NCBI GenBank assembly: GCA_009859145.1
Contig: VRVR01000035.1
Location: 240,140-249,553 of the forward strand
DNA length: 9,414 nt
Source of the DNA: Andalucia godoyi And28
Taxonomy: Eukaryota > Protista > Jakobida
Reading direction: 5' to 3'
The notes below the pieces were generated by a model, which saw only the letters and a list, made by a program, of their open reading frames with translations, was not told the origin of the DNA and searched no databases. Positions 1 through 9,414 of this stretch are shown here, in pieces. Each line of letters begins with the position of its first letter. The first letter of the stretch is position 1. Both the position numbers and the translations under genes were made by a program.

Positions 1-28
<28 letters not shown>
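1..28. repeat. (CT)14 microsatellite, cut by the window edge, at the start of a ~145-nt pyrimidine-rich tract
   Basis: Direct read: ctct... at 1-28, then T/C-rich sequence to 147. Confidence 0.95.
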
Positions 29-32
<4 letters not shown>

Positions 33-222: not shown

Positions 223-447
223 TTTCCACATGCAAGCATCTGCGTCCAAAAAGAAGAGAGTCGTCGAGGAAGAAGAAAGCAATAAAAAGAAAAAATAACA
301 TGAAGACGTCAAGAATGCCATCTGCTGTACCGAAATTCGCTCTCCTAGCCGTGCATCACGTTCTGCGGTACGACACGATATCACGATGAATATTTTATTC
401 CTACAGCAAGACTGGGTGGATCTTGTGTCGCTGCATCGTTGCGCAGA

Positions 448-1716
448 ATGGATCATCCGATCGTTGCGATTGCGCGAGCGGACCAAGCTGCAAGTGTGCG
501 GCAGTCTTTGAATTTAATTTTGGGAAACCGCAAGCTGCACAAGGACCCCGTGGCTGCGTTTGATCGACGGCTCTTCCAGTGCCGAACGGCTTCACGCGAT
601 CCTTTGTTTCCGGACAGCATGTTTTGCGACGGTTTCCTCAAGGATGATTTGATGAAGGCGGGTGTAGCAGAGGAACAGGAGGCACTGGCGATCGGAAATT
701 CAGTGAAGACGGCGTCGAAGCTGGCCGCGATGATCTTGAAGCAGTGTCGTCAGCTGTGCGAAGCAGAGGCATCATTGGAGATTTCGACATGTGCTGATCT
801 TGTGCGGCTGGAGCGGTTTGCAGACCACGATTTCGCAAATGTGGTGTTTTCATGCACGGAATTCAGAAGGAGAATCGATGCGAAGAAATGGGCTGTTGTG
901 CTGCGTGCATGCCCGACGCTGGCTTCGGCCGACACAATTCTGCTCAGCATTGATCCTGCCTTGTTGGATCGCTTGCGAAAGACATTCCATGAGAATTGCA
1001 AATCGATGAAGGGCTTTGCTTTGCATTTGTTTTTGCTTATGTATAGATACGATACACTTGGTGGTCCTGGGTACCAAGGAGCGCTGCCGGACGACGTCTT
1101 TGAGCTTCTGCGAAACACGTTCGATGTGTCAGTCGAGAGCTTTGCGTCGCCACTGAATCGTGTTCTTCCGCACTTTTGCTCGGCATTTCCAGATACCGAT
1201 GCGATTTTTGGCAGTCTGGGTTCGTTTTTTGCCGTCGACAGGATTCCAGAAGGCTCGAATGGCTCATTTGAAGCCAATCCGCCGTTTGACTTGTCCTTCA
1301 TGGCAGATTTCGTGGACCACATGACAAGACTTTTAAAGACGCCGAAGCCGTGCAGTTTTGTCGTCATCGTACCCGCGTACAAGAAAGATGCAGAGTATTG
1401 GGCGAAACTGGCGACACATCCAATGCTACGCTTGATGGCTTCTCTGGGGTCTTCCAAGCATGCATACAAGGAAGGATTTCACTATCGACTCCGAAAAAAG
1501 CTGCGCATGGCCGAATTCGAAACGGGTGTTTTCGTCATTCAGAATGACGCAGGCGCTAAGAACTGGCCTATACCGAAGGACTTCAAGACAGACTTGCACA
1601 CCGCGTTTGATTCCGAAGATGCACCAAGTTCTTCCGCGAAGACTGCAGGTCGAAAATGTGGTGACACGGAATCCGCTGATGCTGGGCGCAGCGCAAAGAA
1701 GTTCCGAAAGTCCTGA
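448..1716 (+). CDS. PCIF1: PCIF1/CAPAM-like cap-specific adenosine N6-methyltransferase, ~422 aa, apparently intronless
   Basis: Motifs match PCIF1: AFDRRLFQCR..DPLFP (cf. SFNRWMLER..DPLLP), RYDTLGGPGYQGALP, FELLRNTFDVSVESFASPLN (FASPLN 1141-1158), FCSAFPDTDAIFGSLGSFF, GSFEANPPF (NPPF 1276-1287), SFVVIVP, H.YKEGFHY. The ORF track starts at TTG 439; the first in-frame ATG is 448. Stop TGA 1714-1716. Confidence 0.92.
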   Translation: MDHPIVAIARADQAASVRQSLNLILGNRKLHKDPVAAFDRRLFQCRTASRDPLFPDSMFCDGFLKDDLMKAGVAEEQEALAIGNSVKTASKLAAMILKQCRQLCEAEASLEISTCADLVRLERFADHDFANVVFSCTEFRRRIDAKKWAVVLRACPTLASADTILLSIDPALLDRLRKTFHENCKSMKGFALHLFLLMYRYDTLGGPGYQGALPDDVFELLRNTFDVSVESFASPLNRVLPHFCSAFPDTDAIFGSLGSFFAVDRIPEGSNGSFEANPPFDLSFMADFVDHMTRLLKTPKPCSFVVIVPAYKKDAEYWAKLATHPMLRLMASLGSSKHAYKEGFHYRLRKKLRMAEFETGVFVIQNDAGAKNWPIPKDFKTDLHTAFDSEDAPSSSAKTAGRKCGDTESADAGRSAKKFRKS

Positions 1717-1908: not shown

Positions 1909-4401
1909 TCAAAATTTGCCCAAATGTCTGCAAATTGCACATCCGAGAAGAAACTCCTGGCCGGCAGGCGGGTGCTTCATCTGCGTAGGGCACAGCCGTG
2001 GGCCGGGGCACCGCGGTAAATCCTTGATATTATATTTCGTGACGTAGTCACCGCGATCTTGCCGGGTATGGCAGGAGTCGCAAAAGTGCGTATTACCCCA
2101 GCAGTACCAGTTTGCAATGTTGCAGCAATATCTGCACTTGTACTCAATGAACCGCTTGCCATGGGTCATGCAGATCGCCTCGGGACGATTACCCGCGACA
2201 CAGGATCCGCAAATCAACTCTTTGCGATTGATTCTTCGCTTGTTTGGCTCTAAACTGACTGTATCGACGCCTTTGCAAAACTTCTTTTTGAGCCAGGCCT
2301 TGAGTGACGCGAACACCCCTCCGCGATCACCGCCATCGACTTCCTGGGCCTTTCTTTCAAGAGAGACACCAACGCTGCCTCGGTCTGCATGCTCGTTGTT
2401 GTTGTCTCCCGTTCCGTCAGCGTCTCCGGACTCGTCATCCTCAACAACCTCCTCTTCTACTGCAGCCATGCACTGCTTCATTCCGCCAAAGTATGGCTGC
2501 TCACACTCTGCGCACATGTAGTACATGAAGTGTCTAAGGGGATCCTCATCTTCCGCCAGTTTGTACTGCTCGACTGCAGCTCTTTCCAGCGCCTTGCTTT
2601 TGACGTCCTCTCGCAGTTTCCAGTGAGGAGCAAGATACTTGCGCAGGCTGTCGTGATCAATGTCCTTTGTGCACAGTGGGCACTGCAGAAAGCCAAACGA
2701 GATGTGTGCAGTGTGCCATGCCTTTTGAAGCCGTTTGCGTATGCACATGTAATGAAAAACGTGTCCACATTTCAACTGGACGCTCGGAGACGCAGAGAAG
2801 GTTTCGGTCCAGCAGATATTGCAGAAGTCTTCGCCCATCTGAGAACAAGCGAGACACTCCAGATGGTCCTTTTCACCACGAACTCCACCACATGCATGTC
2901 CGCAATCGAGAGTCGCCGAGCACGAAATTGACGATCGCAACTGGCACTCCTTGGAAGAGCAGCAGTCCGCCGGTCGATACAGTCTTGGAACGGGAGGTTT
3001 CTGCGAAGCGTTAGAAAGCCGCTCTGCGAAAACGCTGCTGCTGCCTGAGGATGATGGATAACCGCTGCTATACGCAGAGGGCGGGGTGGGAGCGTGTTGC
3101 TGCTGCTCGGAAGGCAGAGCAGCCGCAAGATCTGCCTTTTTCGCAAGCGGTCCACTGATTGGAATTTGGCACCATCTGCATTTTTGCGCAACGAGTGTCT
3201 GGCGATACTCTTCACACGTAAGATTGTGATGAAACGGCATTGCTTTGCAACTTGCACAAAACTCGGTAGCGCACTCTCGGCATCGAAACCGGTTCTGATC
3301 GTGGTTCTCCTTGCGCTGCTTGTCAATTGCAACACTAGAAATTGTTTCTCCGGCAAGCGGCGATGGTTGTTCCGATACCAATTCAACTGCATCTGCGTTT
3401 GACTGCGTTCTCATGTTCTGATTCTGATTCTGGTTCTGGTTATGGTCGTGGACATGGGCGTGATTGGGTCCATGTCCTTGCTCACCGTGATGATGATGAC
3501 CACGGCGGCAGCAGTTCAGCCTCTGAAGAAGTGTTATCCTTGGCACCTCCTGTTTTGCTTTCCGAGAATGCAACGATGGTGAGAGGCACGGGGCTGCAGG
3601 AAGCGGCTCAAATACACATCCGCAGCCTTGCTTTGGACATCGAACCAACTTCAGAGAGTCATGCTGCGCTTCATCGATTGACTGGCCATTTCTGACGGTT
3701 ATCGCTGCTGTCGTCGTTTCTGCGCTTGCCAACAAACTGTCGACAACGTTCGTTACGGATGCTGAAACAGATGAAACAGATGATGACGAAGATGAAGAAG
3801 ACGGGTGGTCCAAAAGAGCAAGGAACTTGGCTTCGAGATAGCTTTCAAAGATCGGGCCGAGTTCCTTGATGGAGACCTGAACATCGCAGACGGGACACGT
3901 AGTCTTTTCGTACCGTCTTAGATGCTGATCGATGCATTCCGAGCAAACGCAGTGATTACACTCTTCGAGAATAGTAATCTTTCGAACAAAGGTTTCCTTT
4001 TCACACTTTTCACATTGAATTCGCCCCGGAGAAGTCTGCGGAAGACTGTCGAACTCATCTCCGGCACCAAGGACATTGGAGTCCCCAAAGACACACGATC
4101 GCTTTGCACTGCTCGGCTGTTTCTTCCTCGACGACAGCCTGCTTCCAGGGCCGCAGCTTGCACTACTGCGGACCGGAGTAGTCTGGCTCGAACCGTCAAA
4201 TCGCGGAAGCACATTCACAGAACCTGACACAGAAGCTGAAGAAGAAACTGCAGATGAATTGTGATCCGCGAACAAAGCGACCGCATTCGTCGCGCAATCG
4301 CTCTTGCTTGGAGTCGTCTTGATAACACACGGATGCATCGCAGGCGAATTGCCCACTTCTTGAAATGGCTTTCGTCTCGGAGTTGTTTCAACCGACTGCA
4401 T
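1909..4401 (-). CDS. Putative E3 ubiquitin ligase: RING-HC (RBR RING1-like) + IBR + MYCBP2/Highwire/RPM-1-type C-terminal RING-H2 and tandem-cysteine (RCR) domain, ~830 aa
   Basis: C3HC4 RING CEKC..CNHCVCSEC..CPVC (4014-3886). IBR CPKQGC...CRECATEFCASCKAMPFHHNLTC (3639-3214). PHR-type Zn segments CRWC...CSSKEC and CGHACGGVRGE. RING-H2 CNICWTE..LKCGHVFHYMC..ISFGFLQCPLC (2823-2671). Then YYMCAECEQPYFGGMKQC, ELICGSC, HGKRFIEYKCRYCCNIANWYCWGNTHFCDSCH and HPPAGQEFLLGCAICR, collinear with the MYCBP2 C-terminus. Start is ATG 4401 or 4338. Not a full-length MYCBP2 orthologue, so no symbol is given. Confidence 0.9.
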   Translation of the reverse strand: MQSVETTPRRKPFQEVGNSPAMHPCVIKTTPSKSDCATNAVALFADHNSSAVSSSASVSGSVNVLPRFDGSSQTTPVRSSASCGPGSRLSSRKKQPSSAKRSCVFGDSNVLGAGDEFDSLPQTSPGRIQCEKCEKETFVRKITILEECNHCVCSECIDQHLRRYEKTTCPVCDVQVSIKELGPIFESYLEAKFLALLDHPSSSSSSSSVSSVSASVTNVVDSLLASAETTTAAITVRNGQSIDEAQHDSLKLVRCPKQGCGCVFEPLPAAPCLSPSLHSRKAKQEVPRITLLQRLNCCRRGHHHHGEQGHGPNHAHVHDHNQNQNQNQNMRTQSNADAVELVSEQPSPLAGETISSVAIDKQRKENHDQNRFRCRECATEFCASCKAMPFHHNLTCEEYRQTLVAQKCRWCQIPISGPLAKKADLAAALPSEQQQHAPTPPSAYSSGYPSSSGSSSVFAERLSNASQKPPVPRLYRPADCCSSKECQLRSSISCSATLDCGHACGGVRGEKDHLECLACSQMGEDFCNICWTETFSASPSVQLKCGHVFHYMCIRKRLQKAWHTAHISFGFLQCPLCTKDIDHDSLRKYLAPHWKLREDVKSKALERAAVEQYKLAEDEDPLRHFMYYMCAECEQPYFGGMKQCMAAVEEEVVEDDESGDADGTGDNNNEHADRGSVGVSLERKAQEVDGGDRGGVFASLKAWLKKKFCKGVDTVSLEPNKRRINRKELICGSCVAGNRPEAICMTHGKRFIEYKCRYCCNIANWYCWGNTHFCDSCHTRQDRGDYVTKYNIKDLPRCPGPRLCPTQMKHPPAGQEFLLGCAICRHLGKF

Positions 4402-4700: not shown

Positions 4701-5879
4701 TTATTTAATGTAGTCGCGGGCCCAGATTTCCACGTTTGGAAATTCCCACTGGAGCTCGTCAACGGGTGCGGTCTGGAGAGCGGGACATGTGCTTGCGTTT
4801 AAGTGCTTGAGCATTGGGCAAGCAGTCAGGAACTGCCGTACGACGTCTGCATCGATTCCGGGACACCCGTCAACGACGAGGGTTTGAAGACGGGTGCACA
4901 TCATGAGTGCTTGAAGGACAGTCTGAGGAACGACCGCTGCATAGCGCGCAATGGAGACGGTCGTGAGCGTCTCGGCCAGCTTACCGAACAAAGCAGCCAG
5001 CCCGGCTTCCGAGTGCCCGCTTGCATTTACACTGCCGCTTGTGCTTGTGCTTGCGCTTGCACTCACGTTCATGCCTTCAAGAATCAGCGTCCGTAGTCGC
5101 GACACGCGGCCGACCTCGGCAAGATCGTCGTCGGTGAGTGGGATGCGAGACAGACAGAGCTCCTCAAGGGCGCCAAATGCGGCGAGCGACCCGGTGGCGA
5201 GCGGAGTGATACCGCGGCACGCCCACAAGTTCAGGTGGGTCAGAGTGGTCGTCAGCGCCGGAGACGGGGTGCCAGCAGCACCCGCAGTCGTACTCGGCGG
5301 CGCCGGCGGATGGTGTGAGTTGACGCTCGCGATCTGCGGGCTTGATGCAGTAGCACTGGCAGCGGAAGGGAGGGGAGGGGGCGAAGCGAGTGACGCTAGA
5401 AAGACAGGGGTGATGCTGGCACACCCGGCTACGGTGAGCATTTGCAAGGCCGGGCATCCGTGGGCGATGAGCGTGGCGTCCGCGTCGGCGAGCGGGGCAA
5501 ATGACAGATCGAGCTTGATGAGGAGTCGTAGCGGGTGAACGGCGAGTGCAGCGAGGATCGACGTTGTGCAAAACGTAGGAATCGAAAGACTCGTGCAGCT
5601 TGCATGAACGGCGAGAAACAGATCCGAGAGAGTCCGCGGCAGAACACCGCGCGCCACAAGAACACTGCCGAGATCCACCTCGCGAAATACCCCACTCGCG
5701 TCGCCGCAGTACGTTCGAAGAAACGCCGTGCTCACGAGTCGCAGTCGCCACAGTTCAATTCCTGTCAAATACACACTTATCCGACGGACAAACAGCTCGT
5801 CCAGCACATACGGCTTCCATAACAGCGTCGAGTCACGCTTCGTTCGAACCAATCCCGCTCGCGACAATTGCCCAACCAT
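4701..5879 (-). CDS. F-box / leucine-rich-repeat (FBXL-like, cysteine-containing LRR) protein, 392 aa
   Basis: F-box-like VLDELFVRRISVYLTGIELWRLRLVSTAF (~5807-5720). LRRs: LIKLDLSFAPL, CPALQMLTVAGCASIT, LTHLNLWACRGIT, LEELCLSRIPLTD, LRTLILEG, LQTLVVDGCPGID, CPMLKHLNASTC. An in-frame TAG (5885-5883) lies just upstream of ATG 5879. Stop TAA 4703-4701. Confidence 0.8.
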   Translation of the reverse strand: MVGQLSRAGLVRTKRDSTLLWKPYVLDELFVRRISVYLTGIELWRLRLVSTAFLRTYCGDASGVFREVDLGSVLVARGVLPRTLSDLFLAVHASCTSLSIPTFCTTSILAALAVHPLRLLIKLDLSFAPLADADATLIAHGCPALQMLTVAGCASITPVFLASLASPPPLPSAASATASSPQIASVNSHHPPAPPSTTAGAAGTPSPALTTTLTHLNLWACRGITPLATGSLAAFGALEELCLSRIPLTDDDLAEVGRVSRLRTLILEGMNVSASASTSTSGSVNASGHSEAGLAALFGKLAETLTTVSIARYAAVVPQTVLQALMMCTRLQTLVVDGCPGIDADVVRQFLTACPMLKHLNASTCPALQTAPVDELQWEFPNVEIWARDYIK

Positions 5880-6201: not shown

Positions 6202-8469
6202 TCACTGATAGGGATTCGAGGACGCGGAAGCGTGTGACGCGGTTGCAAAGAACGCTGCGTTTTGGGCCAATGACCACCGTGCAGAGGAAACGCGGTGCAG
6301 GTCTTGGTGCGCCAGGCGCGGGTCGTCCCATGTAGTGGTGCGCATGTTGTGGTCGATAAAGTATACGCGTCCGGAGGCAGGATCGGTGCGCTGTTCCCAT
6401 CCCGTCGGCAGATCGCTGGTTGGGCAGGGGGTCTGCATGGACGGCGCATAGTTGGCGGCAGGCACTGGAGCGGCAACAGACACATTGTTCACAGGCTGCG
6501 CAACAAACGGCATCGCTGGCTTCGGGTTGCCATACGACGTATTTTGATATAGCAACGAAGTCGGCATCGCCCCGTATGGATTGCTCGGCGCACCAAAAGA
6601 GGTCGGTGTGGAGTAGGACGACCCTCCAGCGCCAACTGAAGTGGGTGCAATGGACGAGAGTGGTGCGGAGACTAGCGGAGTGCCGTAGGGTGAGGAGGTT
6701 GTTTGCGGGATTTGAGGCTGCGGCTGGGTCTGTGGACGCAGGGGTCCGAGGTTCGGCGTTGGGCCAATGACAACGGCTGCGCTGTTCGGGCCGGAATACG
6801 GAGTCGATGCGGCGCCGAGTGTCAGTGGAGCCGCAACAACGCCAGATCCATACTGCAATCCGTATGGAACTGGCTGCGTCGAACTGCCATACGGAAATCC
6901 CGCGGTAGCTGTTGGTGCTGCTGGTGCTGGTGCTGGTGCTGCTGGAACAACAGCCGGAGATGGGTGGATGCTGATGACGGGTGCCTGCACGAGGGGTACC
7001 GGAGTGGGCTGCGGCCCATACGGGGAGGAACTGCTCAGCGACGGAGAGAGGCCTCCGAAAGGCAAAGCCGTGTTTAACAAAGAATTTGCAGGATACGGGG
7101 TGCTGACGCCGGTCGAGAGTGGAAGCTGCGGCTGCTGCGGCTGCTGCTGAGGCAACTGCGGCTGTGGTTGCTGCTGAGCGGATTGGGCTGGAGGAATGGG
7201 CATAGGCAACCGGGTGTCTGGAGCAAGTGAGCCAAGCAGAGCCTTTCCAGAGTGAACTCCCGTTTCGTTGCGCACACCACCGACCATCTGGCCAAGCACC
7301 GGGACGTTTGCCAGAAACAAGAGACCTGAAAACGTGCCAATGATCAACCCTGAAGGACCGACAATGGACTCGGAAACGTTCACTGCATTGGAAGGTGGCC
7401 AGCTTGCGGATCCAAGCCCGCTTATATACTTGCTAATGGACATCAACGCAGAACCCAATACTGCGTCTTCTCCGGTTCGTGCACTTCGAAATGAAAATGT
7501 GACGGACCCGTTCAGAAATTCAGCGAGCGACACCTCACGAAACAGCTGCGGTGCGTCGTGCCATGTGGAGCTGAAACCTGACCCGTTCGTGATGACGCAC
7601 GACTGCTTTGCAGTCGCTACCTTTTGTTTTTGCTCCCAATCCGAAGTCCACTGATACACAAGATATGCATTCGCATGCGGCTGTCCCGCAAGCGCTGTCC
7701 CGACAACCGAGATCTGCGCAGACAGTTCTTTGAAAGTAAACACTACTTCTGAAATATTTTCAAAAACACAACGGAAGGAAATGCGGCCTGCGGGGACACC
7801 GTTCTTTCGAAGCAGCAAGTCATGATGAACAGGCCCAGTCGCAAGAGACTCGAGGTCCACAGTCACTGAGCCAATCAGCACATTGGTCCCAAAACGACTA
7901 TAGTCATACACTTCCAGCAAAAACTCCTTCTTGTCCAGAAACTTCACGTGTCGCGTCTCGTACTTAAACTCGATGACGTGGTCCGTCCAGCTGGCATCTC
8001 GTGCTAATGACCAGACGAAAAAAATACCAGGATACTGTGAATCGCTCACATGCGCAGAAAATAAACAAGGAGAGAAAGAAGGGGAGAGGAGGAGGAGGAG
8101 AAGAAGAAGAAGAAGAAGAAGAAGAAGAAGAAGAAGAAGAAGAAGAAGAAGAAGAAGAAGAAGAAGAAGAAGAAGAAGAAGAAGAAGGGATAAAAGGCAG
8201 CATACTTTTAGGGAAATGCGAAGTCTTGAAAGTTCGGAAATGGTCAAAGTCCCCTTGGATGTAAGGATCGGGTTCCTTATGACTGGAATTCGGAAGAAAA
8301 GTGAGGGAAGGAAGCAGAGAGAACAGCGTGTATTGAACACCGTGAGCAATGCAATCAACATAAGCAACGGACAGCAGCAAAGGATACAGGGGTAAACATA
8401 CGAAGAAGTCAGTGGTAGATTAGAAACTGCAAAGTTGGACACATGAACACGAAACAAGGACGCGGACAT
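6202..8469 (-). CDS. C2-domain + second C2-like domain + Pro/Gln/Tyr-rich region + C-terminal WW protein; exons 8469-8402, 8282-8206, 8003-6202
   Basis: Splicing restores a contiguous C2 domain: MSASLFRVHVSNFAVSNLPLTSS|HKEPDPYIQGDFDHFRTFKTSHFPK|TRDASW...FLLEVYDYSRFGTNVLIGSVTVDL. Splice phases match (2/2, 1/1). Second C2-like region: VVFTFKELSA...AYLVYQW...STW...VTFSF..GEDAVLGSALMSIS. WW: LPTGWEQRTDPASGRVYFIDHNMRTTTWDDPR (6411-6316). Stop TGA 6204-6202. An upstream in-frame ATG at 8580 is an alternative start. Confidence 0.82.
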   Translation of the reverse strand: MSASLFRVHVSNFAVSNLPLTSSYVYPCILCCCPLLMLIALLTVFNTRCSLCFLPSLFFRIPVIRNPILTSKGTLTISELSRLRISLKVCCLLSLLLLLLLLLLLLLLLLLLLLLLLLLLLLLLLLLLSPSFSPCLFSAHVSDSQYPGIFFVWSLARDASWTDHVIEFKYETRHVKFLDKKEFLLEVYDYSRFGTNVLIGSVTVDLESLATGPVHHDLLLRKNGVPAGRISFRCVFENISEVVFTFKELSAQISVVGTALAGQPHANAYLVYQWTSDWEQKQKVATAKQSCVITNGSGFSSTWHDAPQLFREVSLAEFLNGSVTFSFRSARTGEDAVLGSALMSISKYISGLGSASWPPSNAVNVSESIVGPSGLIIGTFSGLLFLANVPVLGQMVGGVRNETGVHSGKALLGSLAPDTRLPMPIPPAQSAQQQPQPQLPQQQPQQPQLPLSTGVSTPYPANSLLNTALPFGGLSPSLSSSSPYGPQPTPVPLVQAPVISIHPSPAVVPAAPAPAPAAPTATAGFPYGSSTQPVPYGLQYGSGVVAAPLTLGAASTPYSGPNSAAVVIGPTPNLGPLRPQTQPQPQIPQTTSSPYGTPLVSAPLSSIAPTSVGAGGSSYSTPTSFGAPSNPYGAMPTSLLYQNTSYGNPKPAMPFVAQPVNNVSVAAPVPAANYAPSMQTPCPTSDLPTGWEQRTDPASGRVYFIDHNMRTTTWDDPRLAHQDLHRVSSARWSLAQNAAFFATASHASASSNPYQ
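8004..8205 (-). other. Intron 2 of the C2-WW gene (202 nt, GTATGC...TCATTAG)
   Basis: Donor GT 8205-8204, acceptor AG 8005-8004. Joining gives K-T-R-D-A-S-W, matching the C2 KT.NP.W motif. Contains the CTT repeat. Confidence 0.8.
8086..8187. repeat. Compound microsatellite (GAG)5(AAG)29 inside a 124-nt pure-purine tract (8067-8190)
   Basis: Direct read. The transcript strand reads (CTT)29(CTC)5. Confidence 0.97.
8283..8401 (-). other. Intron 1 of the C2-WW gene (119 nt, GTATGT...polypyrimidine...TTCCAG)
   Basis: Donor GT 8401-8400, acceptor AG 8284-8283. Joining links exon 1 to the DPYIQ C2 strand, which the ORF track shows in another frame (ORF 7964..8380). Confidence 0.82.
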
Positions 8470-8605
8470 GTGTTGCGCAAATCGGTCGCCACTCTCTAGG
8501 CCTTTGGATAGCTCGGTAGAACAGGGTCGGTCACTCAGAACACCAGACACCAAAGATCCGAGAAAGGACTGCAAAAGCATCTATATGGCAAGTGCGGGGA
8601 TCGAC

Positions 8606-8771: not shown

Positions 8772-9414
8772 TCAATTAGAGTCGTCGATTTCCGAGGCAA
8801 CTTGCGAATGTGAGGAGCGAACAGCTATGTTTGCTGGTGCTCCATCCATTTCCTCGAGAGCCATATACGCTTTTTTGTGTCAGACAGAGCCGCATCCGGA
8901 ATGCAGCTCTCGTAATTACCTCGGATTAGCAACATGTTGCTAAACGGTTCGTGGAAGTCGTCGTCGGCGCCTGTCAGAGATACATTGCCCAGAGACCGAA
9001 AAGACTCGACTTCCACTATCTTACTCTTTTTTGATATTCCAGCAAGTCTCTCGCTGCTTTGTTGCTGCGATTGAAAAATTCAATGAGCTTCTTTGCTCTG
9101 TCGACGATGTGCTGCAAAATTGGGTTGTCAAATGCTCCCTGGACTGCCAGCTGCAGTGTGTGAATGAAGCAGCGAGAGTGTGGCAGTCCTGCGTTGACTA
9201 TTGCATTCACCTGAACATCGGCATTGTCTGAAGTCACAGAAACAACTTGCTCCTTTGTAATACCGTATTCTGACAAACACTGATCCAGCGAAGTGGTCAG
9301 AACATCAGTCGATTCCGATGAGGACATGCATTTAAGCAGCAGCGAAACCATTCGAAACTTTTCATCAATGAAGTGTCCGGTCGCGGCAACGTAATGATGC
9401 CCACTCTTTGAGGG
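8772..9414 (-). pseudogene. hAT-superfamily (Ac/ZBED1-like) transposase, 5' part outside the window, 3' part degenerate and truncated
   Basis: Open from the window edge: PSKSGHHYVAATGHFIDEKFRMVSLLL (cf. WTS...Y..VTAHFID..W.L), VTSDNA (second catalytic Asp 9228-9226), CFIHTLQLAV (CxxH motif 9171-9160), KKLIEFFNRS. Beyond 9016 there are stops, a frameshift and only a degenerate EVITR...TQK segment. The third catalytic Glu and the dimerisation domain are absent. Confidence 0.85.
8971..9024 (-). other. Probable 54-nt intron in the hAT transposase (GTAAGA...CTGACAG)
   Basis: Consensus donor at 9024, CTGAC immediately before the acceptor AG 8972-8971. Removal deletes two in-frame stops (TAG 9018-9016 and a TGA) and keeps the frame into ..NRLAT..SEVITR. 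Confidence 0.5.

What the first reader, a model, noticed from the sequence alone, without database searches (positions are those of the whole stretch)
1909..4014. Hybrid E3 ligase: RBR-type RING1-IBR fused to a MYCBP2-type RING-Cys-relay module
Seen: a C3HC4 RING, a helical linker and an IBR. Where an RBR would carry RING2/Rcat, the protein instead has the PHR Zn segments, RING-H2 and tandem-cysteine domain. Established: RBRs (Parkin, HOIP, ARIH1) pass ubiquitin from RING1-bound E2 to a RING2 Cys. MYCBP2 relays it from C4520 to C4572 and esterifies Thr/Ser. Both relay Cys equivalents are present here (MKQC 2472-2470; WYC 2103-2101). Inference: one ~830-aa chain with two potential E2-binding RINGs feeding one relay, lacking MYCBP2's RCC1, PHR-repeat and FBD1 regions. 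It could use two E2s, or use RING1-IBR for allosteric ubiquitin sensing. Similar architectures may exist among unannotated protist proteins; I know of no functional description.
Basis: partly seen in the sequence, partly recalled or inferred. Interest (0 to 1): 0.85.

Follow-up and report, generated by a model that had tools for sequence, protein, structure and literature searches.

The report
RBR-fronted RING-Cys-relay ubiquitin ligase
A gene of the free-living protist Andalucia godoyi encodes a compact ubiquitin ligase that joins the front half of an RBR ligase to the two-cysteine relay engine so far described only in the giant animal protein MYCBP2, and the same design occurs in many other protist lineages.

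Summary
Window 1909-4401 (- strand) is one uninterrupted 830-aa ORF on an Andalucia godoyi (jakobid) nuclear contig. Residues 519-830 match the MYCBP2 RING-Cys-relay (RCR) crystal structures (phmmer 4e-50; Foldseek 1.9e-19). Both relay cysteines (C644, C767) and the Glu/His partners (E728, H778) are present. Upstream lie a C3HC4 RING (130-172), helices and a C6HC IBR (253-396).

On this protein alone the IBR call is below Pfam's threshold. At family level it is solid:
- Most of the relatives checked keep every RING1 and IBR zinc ligand.
- Pfam calls an IBR in 36 of 65 aligned members.
- A RING1-IBR profile hits only RBR ligases at the top of the PDB (ARIH2 1.4e-13, HOIL-1, HOIP, RNF14, ARIH1, CUL9, RNF216).

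No RING2/Rcat exists. Eleven residues after the IBR the chain enters the CRxC zinc block that also opens the RCR module of MYCBP2.

The full architecture occurs in stramenopiles, Amoebozoa, glaucophytes, Rhodelphis, cryptophytes, Heterolobosea and metamonads. Reviews still call MYCBP2 the sole RCR ligase. Databases label relatives 'MYCBP2/highwire-like' or 'RCR-type E3', and I found no paper describing the RBR front end. The role of RING1-IBR is untested. I rate it a new variant of a known kind, interest about 0.7.

The parts
1909..4401 (-). Whole ORF, 830 aa plus stop: RING1-IBR-RCR ubiquitin ligase of Andalucia godoyi
   Evidence: ORF; contig VRVR01000035.1 belongs to the A. godoyi assembly; no gene with this product is on record
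4027..4401 (-). N-terminal aa 1-125, Ser/Pro-rich, predicted disordered, no domain
   Evidence: most of aa 1-122 has pLDDT below 50; no Pfam hit
3886..4014 (-). RING1, C3HC4, aa 130-172
   Evidence: pattern; ligands conserved in at least 90% of 65 relatives; profile aligns to RING1 of ARIH2, HOIL-1, HOIP; pLDDT 92-94
3694..3870 (-). Helical RING1-IBR linker, aa 178-236, carrying a poly-Ser insert. C172 to C255 is 82 aa here against a family median of 38
   Evidence: helices 178-198 and 208-236; lengths; the linker aligns with the RBR RING1-IBR helix region
3214..3645 (-). IBR (C6HC), aa 253-396: C255, C260 ... C374, C377, C382, C385, H391, C396
   Evidence: Pfam IBR 1.3e-3, sub-threshold; IBR called in 36/65 relatives, best 4e-11; (pLDDT above 90 on both halves)
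3346..3582 (-). Lineage-specific disordered insert inside the IBR, aa 274-352, His-rich with an (NQ)n run
3169..3180 (-). CRWC zinc knuckle (C408, C411), 11 residues after the last IBR ligand. First element of the block shared with MYCBP2
   Evidence: C408 invariant, C411 at least 90%; MYCBP2 orthologues align from their own 'CRFC'; spacing 8-12 in all 65
2977..3120 (-). Low-complexity loop, aa 428-475, between the CRWC knuckle and the rest of the zinc block. C411 to C481 is 69 aa here against a median of 22
2845..2964 (-). Pre-RING Cys/His zinc block, aa 480-519 (C481, C486, C494, C500, H502, C504, H513, C516, C519). Shared with MYCBP2 and lying outside the solved RCR structures
   Evidence: pLDDT 95; no PDB or Pfam match
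2671..2823 (-). RING-H2 of the RCR module, aa 527-577
   Evidence: zf-RING_2 8.4e-7, above cut-off; (I529 is I/V in 65/65, P575 in 55/65)
2572..2652 (-). Linker helix between RING-H2 and the tandem-cysteine domain, aa 584-610
   Evidence: aligned to MYCBP2; helix 584-610, pLDDT above 90
2464..2529 (-). First part of the tandem-cysteine domain, aa 625-646, with the upstream relay cysteine C644 (codon 2470-2472), equivalent to MYCBP2 C4520
   Evidence: alignment 'YFGGEARC' / 'YFGGMKQC'; C in 65/65
2236..2463 (-). Insert of 76 aa in the mediator loop, aa 647-722, acidic at its start and basic/helical at its end. C644 to E728 is 83 aa here against a family median of 13
   Evidence: longest of 65; the closest relative P0002 has a similar insert; disordered except helix 696-708
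1912..2235 (-). Second part of the tandem-cysteine domain, aa 723-830. Holds E728 (2218-2220), downstream relay cysteine C767 (2101-2103) and H778 (2068-2070)
   Evidence: C767 65/65, H778 63/65, E/D at 728 in 53/65; Cys-His-Glu triad of MYCBP2 as described in PMC9527308

Best explanation
The ORF encodes a functional transthiolating ubiquitin E3. It belongs to an undescribed but widespread protist family of about 500-800 aa. The family has the order RING1 - helices - IBR - CRxC/zinc block - RING-H2 - helix - tandem-cysteine domain.

Proposed mechanism:
1. The RCR half is the catalytic engine and works as in MYCBP2. The RING-H2 (aa 527-577) docks a charged E2.
2. Ubiquitin is taken as a thioester by C644 on the flexible mediator loop.
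3. Ubiquitin is relayed to C767.
4. It is discharged with the help of H778 and E728, probably onto a hydroxyl (Ser/Thr or a non-protein OH) rather than a lysine.
5. The RBR-derived RING1-IBR has lost its Rcat and is tied 11 residues ahead of the first zinc knuckle of the RCR module. I take it to be an accessory ubiquitin or E2~ubiquitin binding platform that regulates or primes the relay, as RING1-IBR surfaces do in RBR ligases. I do not take it to be the main entry port in this species.

Shown: the architecture, the residue conservation and the family distribution. Inferred: every catalytic step and the role of RING1-IBR.
For: RCR half:
- MYCBP2 5o6c/6t7f match at E=4e-50 by sequence and 1.9e-19 by fold.
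- C644 and C767 are invariant in 65/65 relatives. H778 is kept in 63/65, E/D728 in 53/65, F773 in 61/65.
- RING-H2 E2-contact positions: I529 is I/V in 65/65, P575 is kept in 55/65.
- The Cys-His-Glu triad and the relay are described for MYCBP2 in PMC9527308.

Front half:
- All RING1 and IBR ligands are conserved in at least 90% of relatives.
- Pfam IBR is called in 36/65 members, best E 4e-11.
- The profile against the PDB gives ARIH2 1.4e-13, HOIL-1 3e-11, HOIP 8e-9, then RNF14, ARIH1, CUL9, RNF216 and RNF144A. The alignments run RING1 to IBR.
- Foldseek of the front-half model has RBR ligases among its best hits: HOIL-1L (E=5e-3, prob 0.99), the RNF14 RING, HOIL-1 and HOIP, with RNF216 tenth.

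Junction and single-chain status:
- The IBR-to-CRxC spacing is fixed at 8-12 residues in all 65.
- MYCBP2 orthologues share the block starting at CRFC.
- It is one polypeptide: a single ORF in a genome where most genes lack introns (PMC7050145). The same architecture appears in transcriptome-derived proteins from eight named protist genera.

RING1 as accessory here: K132 sits where 42/65 relatives have L/V/I.
Against: - No biochemical datum exists for any family member.
- The Thr-pocket residue F4586 of MYCBP2 (numbering from my memory of Pao et al. 2018) is Q781 here, and Q in 39/65 relatives. F4573 is W in 58/65. The preferred nucleophile may therefore differ.
- The 83-residue gap between C644 and E728 is the longest of the 65 and could alter or slow the relay.
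- In most relatives RING1 keeps a hydrophobic E2-contact residue and the Pro after the seventh ligand (44/65). In the family as a whole RING1 may therefore be a true E2 dock.
- No model coordinates or PAE were available, so the relative placement of RING1-IBR and the mediator loop is unknown.
Confidence: 0.65

Rival explanations
1. Dual-port or RBR-like entry. RING1-IBR is a true E2~Ub dock (for example for a UBE2L3-like, Cys-reactive E2). It hands ubiquitin to the mediator-loop cysteine C644, which stands in for the missing Rcat cysteine. The RING-H2 is a second port or mainly structural.
For: In RBR ligases RING1-IBR is the platform that presents E2~Ub to a cysteine, and the front half here is specifically RBR-like. 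In the family, RING1 keeps L/V/I at the E2-contact position in 42/65 and Pro after the seventh ligand in 44/65. The mediator loop is flexible, and in A. godoyi it is extended by 76 residues, which could give it reach.
Against: The RING-H2 E2-contact residues are more strictly conserved (I/V 65/65) than those of RING1. A. godoyi itself has K132 at the RING1 contact position. MYCBP2 works without any RING1-IBR. No geometry is available.
Confidence: 0.2
2. The protein is a degenerate or non-relay enzyme. The large inserts in the IBR and the mediator loop have disabled the front end, the relay or both. It then acts as a plain RING E3 or a scaffold.
For: A. godoyi has the longest mediator-loop gap of the 65 (83 aa against a median of 13), a far longer IBR loop (113 against 42) and the longest RING1-IBR linker (82 against 38). 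Pfam's IBR call is sub-threshold on this protein.
Against: Every zinc ligand and both catalytic cysteines are intact. The inserts sit in loops that vary in length across the family. The closest relative keeps a mediator-loop insert of similar length with a similar acidic start, which suggests selection. AlphaFold folds both IBR halves together with pLDDT above 90.
Confidence: 0.08
3. Artefact. Two neighbouring genes (a RING1-IBR gene and an RCR gene) are read through as one ORF, or the contig is mis-assembled.
For: No transcript evidence was available to me. The exact product is not among the genes on record for the assembly.
Against: There are 830 codons without a stop. The junction (IBR - 11 aa - CRxC) is conserved in spacing in all 65 relatives. 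The same fused architecture occurs in 132 proteins, including transcriptome assemblies. The same ORF is present in the public contig.
Confidence: 0.02

Closest known systems
MYCBP2 / PHR proteins (Highwire, RPM-1): the RING-Cys-relay (RCR) module, PDB 5O6C and 6T7F
   Same: The CRxC + Cys/His zinc block, RING-H2, linker helix and tandem-cysteine domain are shared. So are the upstream and downstream relay cysteines and the Glu/His partners. Foldseek reports 31-32% identity over the module.
   Different: 830 aa instead of about 4,600. There is no RCC1-like, PHR, RAE1-binding, FBD1 or Myc-binding region. An RBR-type RING1-IBR sits directly in front of the module. The residue equivalent to F4586 is Q, and F4573 is W. 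There is a 76-aa insert after the upstream cysteine. MYCBP2 orthologues have no RING1-IBR, only a B-box-like finger about 90 aa upstream that weakly resembles the second half of an IBR.
RBR ligases (ARIH2/ARIH1, HOIL-1, HOIP, RNF14, RNF216, CUL9, RNF144A)
   Same: C3HC4 RING1, helical linker and C6HC IBR in the same order, with recognisable sequence similarity (profile E 1.4e-13 to 4e-5; Foldseek).
   Different: There is no RING2/Rcat and no 'GC-x-H-M-x-C' catalytic motif. Only a CxxC knuckle follows, after 11 residues, and it belongs to the RCR zinc block. The link to the next domain is short and fixed in length, not long and flexible.
Database-only protist relatives labelled 'RCR-type E3 ubiquitin transferase' or 'E3 ubiquitin-protein ligase MYCBP2/highwire'. 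Examples: Cavenderia fasciculata DFA_01858, Balamuthia mandrillaris KAL6054132.1 and Anaeramoeba flamelloides. A Dictyostelium discoideum protein, DDB_G0284853, is called 'mycBP2/Highwire-like' in PMC6743453.
   Same: The database proteins are in the same family with the same full architecture. Automatic annotation already recognises the RCR part, and precomputed Pfam often lists an IBR.
   Different: None has a functional or structural description. The one paper I found that mentions a protist MYCBP2-like protein treats it only as a non-confirmed pull-down candidate and does not note the RBR front end. I did not retrieve that Dictyostelium protein, so its architecture is unchecked. The A. godoyi protein itself is not on record as a called gene.

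Membership tests
RING-Cys-relay (RCR) E3 class | RING-H2 that docks the E2 | tested here: met
   Pfam zf-RING_2 8.4e-7, 29.6 bits, above the cut-off of 27.3, aa 527-577. It aligns to the MYCBP2 RING. I529 and P575 are conserved.
RING-Cys-relay (RCR) E3 class | Tandem-cysteine domain with an upstream cysteine in a mediator loop and a downstream cysteine | tested here: met
   C644 aligns with C4520 and C767 with C4572. Both are invariant in 65/65 relatives. Foldseek to 6t7f/5o6c gives about 1e-19.
RING-Cys-relay (RCR) E3 class | Glu and His partners of the downstream cysteine (catalytic triad) | tested here: met
   E728 and H778 align with E4534 and H4583 (numbering derived from chain offsets). 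H is kept in 63/65 and E/D in 53/65. The triad is described in PMC9527308.
RING-Cys-relay (RCR) E3 class | Hydrophobic pocket that selects threonine (F4573, F4578, F4586; residue list recalled from Pao et al. 2018) | tested here: inconclusive
   The equivalents are W768, F773 and Q781. The third position is Q in 39/65 and A in 13/65 relatives.
RING-Cys-relay (RCR) E3 class | Two sequential thioesters and esterification activity | not testable with these tools
   Needs biochemistry.
RBR (RING-between-RING) E3 family | RING1, C3HC4 | tested here: met
   All eight ligands are present. They are conserved in at least 90% of relatives. The profile aligns to RING1 of ARIH2, HOIL-1 and HOIP.
RBR (RING-between-RING) E3 family | IBR, C6HC | tested here: met
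   All eight ligands are present. Pfam IBR is sub-threshold here (19.2 bits against 24.3) but is called in 36/65 relatives, best 4e-11. Both halves fold with pLDDT above 90.
RBR (RING-between-RING) E3 family | RING2/Rcat with the catalytic cysteine | tested here: not met
   There is only one IBR-type stretch per protein. The region after the IBR has no Pfam or PDB match. It is the CRxC zinc block shared with MYCBP2.
PHR proteins (MYCBP2/Highwire/RPM-1 orthologues) | RCC1-like domain, PHR repeats and FBD1/Myc-binding regions in a protein of about 3,500-4,700 aa | tested here: not met
   The protein is 830 aa. No such Pfam domain is found, and aa 1-125 are disordered.

The most novel reading that the evidence does not exclude
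The RING1-IBR-RCR design is the ancestral form of the RCR class, old enough to date to the last eukaryotic common ancestor. It arose from an RBR ligase whose Rcat was replaced by a two-cysteine relay, and animal MYCBP2 is a derived giant that lost the front end. In this family RING1-IBR is a working E2~ubiquitin port that feeds the mediator-loop cysteine. That gives a three-station transfer with two entry ports and ester-forming output in small, tractable proteins.
Probability: 0.25. Interest if true: 0.85.

Novelty: new variant of a known kind. Interest (0 to 1): 0.7.

Why it matters
Reviews up to 2026 treat MYCBP2 as the single member of the RCR class and describe it as conserved from worms to mammals. 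This window shows three things:
- The RCR engine is not confined to animals.
- It exists in proteins of 500-800 aa that should be far easier to express, crystallise and mutate than a 510-kDa protein.
- In those proteins it is fused to the E2~Ub-presenting half of an RBR ligase.

That links two of the transthiolating E3 classes in one chain. It offers a natural experiment on why a second cysteine is needed. It also widens the likely reach of non-lysine (ester) ubiquitination to most eukaryotic supergroups.

Tried and rejected
1. The search for homologous proteins with the whole protein returned only itself, because low-complexity words filled the candidate list. A trimmed family alignment worked.
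2. An exact-product look-up found no called gene. The neighbouring LRR gene gave the contig and the organism.
3. Is the CRxC/zinc block a degenerate Rcat? A profile of it found nothing in the PDB (best hit SLX1, E=0.13) and nothing in Pfam. There is no support for the idea.
4. Does MYCBP2 keep a hidden RING1-IBR? Only a B-box-like finger about 90 aa upstream of CRFC weakly matches the second half of the IBR. hhalign gave probability 79%, and hmmsearch domain E-values were 1e-4 to 1e-2 in a 15-sequence set. This is inconclusive and may be generic zinc-finger resemblance. One Thecamonas protein (AMSG_12273) showed a longer linker+IBR-like match in that permissive search (E=1.3e-5) and could be an intermediate.
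5. Foldseek of the multi-domain models against RBR structures gave RBR ligases among the best hits, but with weak scores (E 5e-3 to 0.06). The disordered inserts and the free domain arrangement explain this. I rely on the sequence profile instead.
6. Rosetta-stone idea: some relatives carry an N-terminal C2 domain (7/65) and a C2+WW gene lies two genes away. BLASTP shows no similarity, so I rejected it.
7. Literature searches for an RBR-RCR hybrid or a protist RCR ligase found only the Dictyostelium pull-down mention.
Full report
**Source and gene.**
The window is part of contig VRVR01000035.1 of assembly GCA_009859145.1. The neighbouring 392-aa product is on record there. The accession prefix belongs to the nuclear genome of the jakobid Andalucia godoyi (PMC7050145). 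That genome is about 20 Mb and compact, and most of its genes lack introns.

The finding lies in ORF 1909..4401 on the minus strand. It is 830 codons long, has no stop, and an in-frame stop lies just upstream of the first ATG. The same ORF is present in the public contig. No gene with this product is on record, so the protein is effectively unannotated.

**Check of the observation.**
The C-terminal 312 residues match the solved RING-Cys-relay module of human MYCBP2:
- phmmer gives 5o6c at E=4e-50 and 6t7f at 8.7e-50, in two blocks, aa 519-647 and 726-827.
- The AlphaFold model matches the same structures at 1.9e-19 and 8.8e-19.

Four residues align with the catalytic residues of MYCBP2:

| This protein | Sequence context or codon | MYCBP2 equivalent |
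|---|---|---|
| C644 | 'YFGGMKQC', codon 2470-2472 | C4520 |
| C767 | 'NWYCWGNTHFC', codon 2101-2103 | C4572 |
| E728 | codon 2218-2220 | E4534 |
| H778 | codon 2068-2070 | H4583 |

PMC9527308 describes the Cys-His-Glu triad.

Upstream lies a C3HC4 RING (C130...C172) and predicted helices (178-198 and 208-236). Then comes a C6HC pattern split by a disordered His/Asn/Gln-rich insert: C255 and C260, then C374, C377, C382, C385, H391 and C396. On this one sequence the front half is only weakly recognised. The RING gives generic hits (RNF4 8e-5). Pfam IBR scores 19.2 bits against a cut-off of 24.3.

**Family evidence.**
An exhaustive HMMER search of 1.84 billion cluster representatives found 1,818 relatives at E<=1e-3, and 341 at E<=1e-30. 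Most of the best are proteins of 450-1,000 aa.

In a MAFFT alignment of 65 of them:
- Both relay cysteines and most RCR zinc ligands are invariant.
- All RING1 ligands, all IBR ligands and the pair C408/C411 are conserved in at least 90%.
- Pfam calls an IBR in 36 of the 65, best E 4e-11.

A profile of the RING1-to-CRxC region (26 sequences) was searched against all PDB sequences. At the top it finds only RBR ligases:

| PDB hit | E-value |
|---|---|
| ARIH2 | 1.4e-13 |
| HOIL-1 | 3e-11 |
| HOIP | 8e-9 |
| RNF14 | 1e-6 |
| ARIH1 | 1e-6 |
| CUL9 | 3e-6 |
| RNF216 | 5e-6 |
| RNF144A | 4e-5 |

The alignments run through RING1, the linker helices and both halves of the IBR.

Foldseek of an AlphaFold model of this region also puts RBR ligases among its best hits (HOIL-1L, RNF14, HOIL-1, HOIP, with RNF216 tenth). 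The scores are weak, E 5e-3 to 0.06. I attribute that to the disordered inserts.

The front half is therefore RBR-type, not merely 'a RING and some cysteines'.

**What replaces the Rcat.**
Eleven residues after the last IBR ligand comes a CRxC knuckle (C408/C411). The spacing is 8-12 in all 65 relatives. A variable loop and a Cys/His-rich block follow (C481...C519).

MYCBP2 orthologues align with the family from their own 'CRFC' onward. This block is therefore the true N-terminal edge of the RCR module. It lies outside the crystallised construct.

A profile of the block matches nothing in the PDB or in Pfam. Only one IBR-type stretch is found per protein. There is no RING2/Rcat.

**Distribution.**
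I collected 207 RCR-bearing proteins. Of these, 163 match the RING1-IBR profile and 132 cover it fully. The remainder are large animal MYCBP2 proteins, fragments, and a few mid-sized proteins without the front end.

The full architecture is present in named organisms from most supergroups:

| Organism | Group |
|---|---|
| Platysulcus | stramenopile |
| Balamuthia, Cavenderia | Amoebozoa |
| Gloeochaete | glaucophyte |
| Rhodelphis | Archaeplastida |
| Guillardia | cryptophyte |
| Acrasis, Andalucia | Discoba |
| Anaeramoeba | metamonad |

Thecamonas and Pelagodinium proteins show at least the IBR-RCR part. Several of these sequences come from transcriptomes, which argues against a gene-model artefact.

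**Peculiarities of the A. godoyi protein.**
Compared with its relatives it carries large disordered inserts:

| Interval | This protein | Family median |
|---|---|---|
| RING1-IBR linker (C172 to C255) | 82 aa | 38 aa |
| IBR loop (C260 to C374) | 113 aa | 42 aa |
| CRxC to next zinc ligand (C411 to C481) | 69 aa | 22 aa |
| Mediator loop (C644 to E728) | 83 aa | 13 aa |

The mediator-loop gap is the longest of the 65. The closest relative, a metagenomic fragment with 56% identity, has an insert of similar length with the same acidic start. The insert is therefore a lineage trait and not noise.

The RING1 position that usually contacts the E2 is K132 here. It is L/V/I in 42 of 65 relatives.

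**Mechanism.**
The strictly conserved RING-H2 contact residues are I/V at 529 in 65/65 and Pro575 in 55/65. Together with the two invariant cysteines and the Glu/His partners, they make an MYCBP2-like relay the most likely chemistry. The path would be E2~Ub on RING-H2, then C644, then C767, then the substrate.

The output is probably an ester. This is less certain, because the pocket differs: the equivalent of F4586 is Gln and that of F4573 is Trp. The residue list is from my memory of Pao et al. 2018.

The role of RING1-IBR is inference only. In RBR ligases this pair presents E2~Ub and binds allosteric ubiquitin. Here it is tied by a short, fixed spacer to the RCR zinc block. I favour an accessory or regulatory ubiquitin/E2~Ub platform for this species. 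I keep a second loading port that feeds C644 as the main rival (0.2). I could not inspect model coordinates or PAE.

**Comparison and novelty.**
- The protein works like an RCR ligase and meets the sequence and structural criteria of that class.
- It is not a PHR/MYCBP2 orthologue, because it has no RCC1, PHR or FBD1 regions.
- It is not a canonical RBR, because it has no Rcat.

Reviews call MYCBP2 the sole RCR ligase, conserved from C. elegans to mammals. Databases label protist relatives 'RCR-type E3 ubiquitin transferase' or 'MYCBP2/highwire'. One paper mentions a Dictyostelium 'mycBP2/Highwire-like protein' as an unconfirmed pull-down hit. I found no description of the RBR front end or of any activity. 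These searches cover open-access papers and bioRxiv only.

I therefore rate it a new variant of a known kind, with interest 0.7.

Noticed in passing
window 439-1716 (+): ORF with a strong PCIF1_WW domain hit (E=1.2e-45), i.e. a PCIF1-like, cap-specific adenosine methyltransferase-type protein. It converges on the ligase gene, with only 192 bp between the two stop codons.
   Followed up: no
window 4701-5879 (-): 392-aa ORF with weak, sub-threshold leucine-rich-repeat hits only. Its exact product is a called gene in the A. godoyi assembly, and that is how the source was identified.
   Followed up: partly
window 6202-8580 (-), repeat at 8099-8187: 792-aa ORF with a clear WW domain (E=2e-13) and a weak C2 hit. 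A perfect 30-copy AGA/TCT trinucleotide repeat at 8099-8187 reads as a poly-Leu run of about 40 in this frame. The first ~190 codons are therefore doubtful, and the real start may be a downstream ATG. Its C2 is not similar to the C2 domains fused to some RBR-RCR relatives.
   Followed up: partly
window 9016-9351 (-): 111-aa ORF with weak DUF659 (hAT-transposase-associated) similarity (E=1.7e-3, below cut-off). It may be a transposon remnant.
   Followed up: no
window 1-29: Perfect (CT)14 dinucleotide repeat at the window edge.
   Followed up: no
L001 (21 kb around the window in VRVR01000035.1): Only two genes are on record in 21 kb of a gene-dense contig that holds many long ORFs. The 830-aa ligase ORF (L001:11479-13971) is not among them. 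The public assembly is sparsely annotated.
   Followed up: partly
relatives P0004, P0008, P0156-P0158 and others (alignment A1): Family members carry varied N-terminal add-ons ahead of RING1: C2 (7/65), RanBP-type zinc finger (2), ubiquitin-like (1), SAP (1), PH (1). This hints at different targeting in different lineages. A. godoyi has only a disordered N-terminus.
   Followed up: no
MYCBP2 orthologues P0083, P0104, P0129; Thecamonas P0112: A B-box-like finger about 90 aa upstream of the CRFC knuckle weakly resembles the second half of the IBR. Thecamonas AMSG_12273 shows a longer linker+IBR-like match (E=1.3e-5 in a small search). This may be a trace of a lost RBR front end, or generic zinc-finger similarity.
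   Followed up: partly
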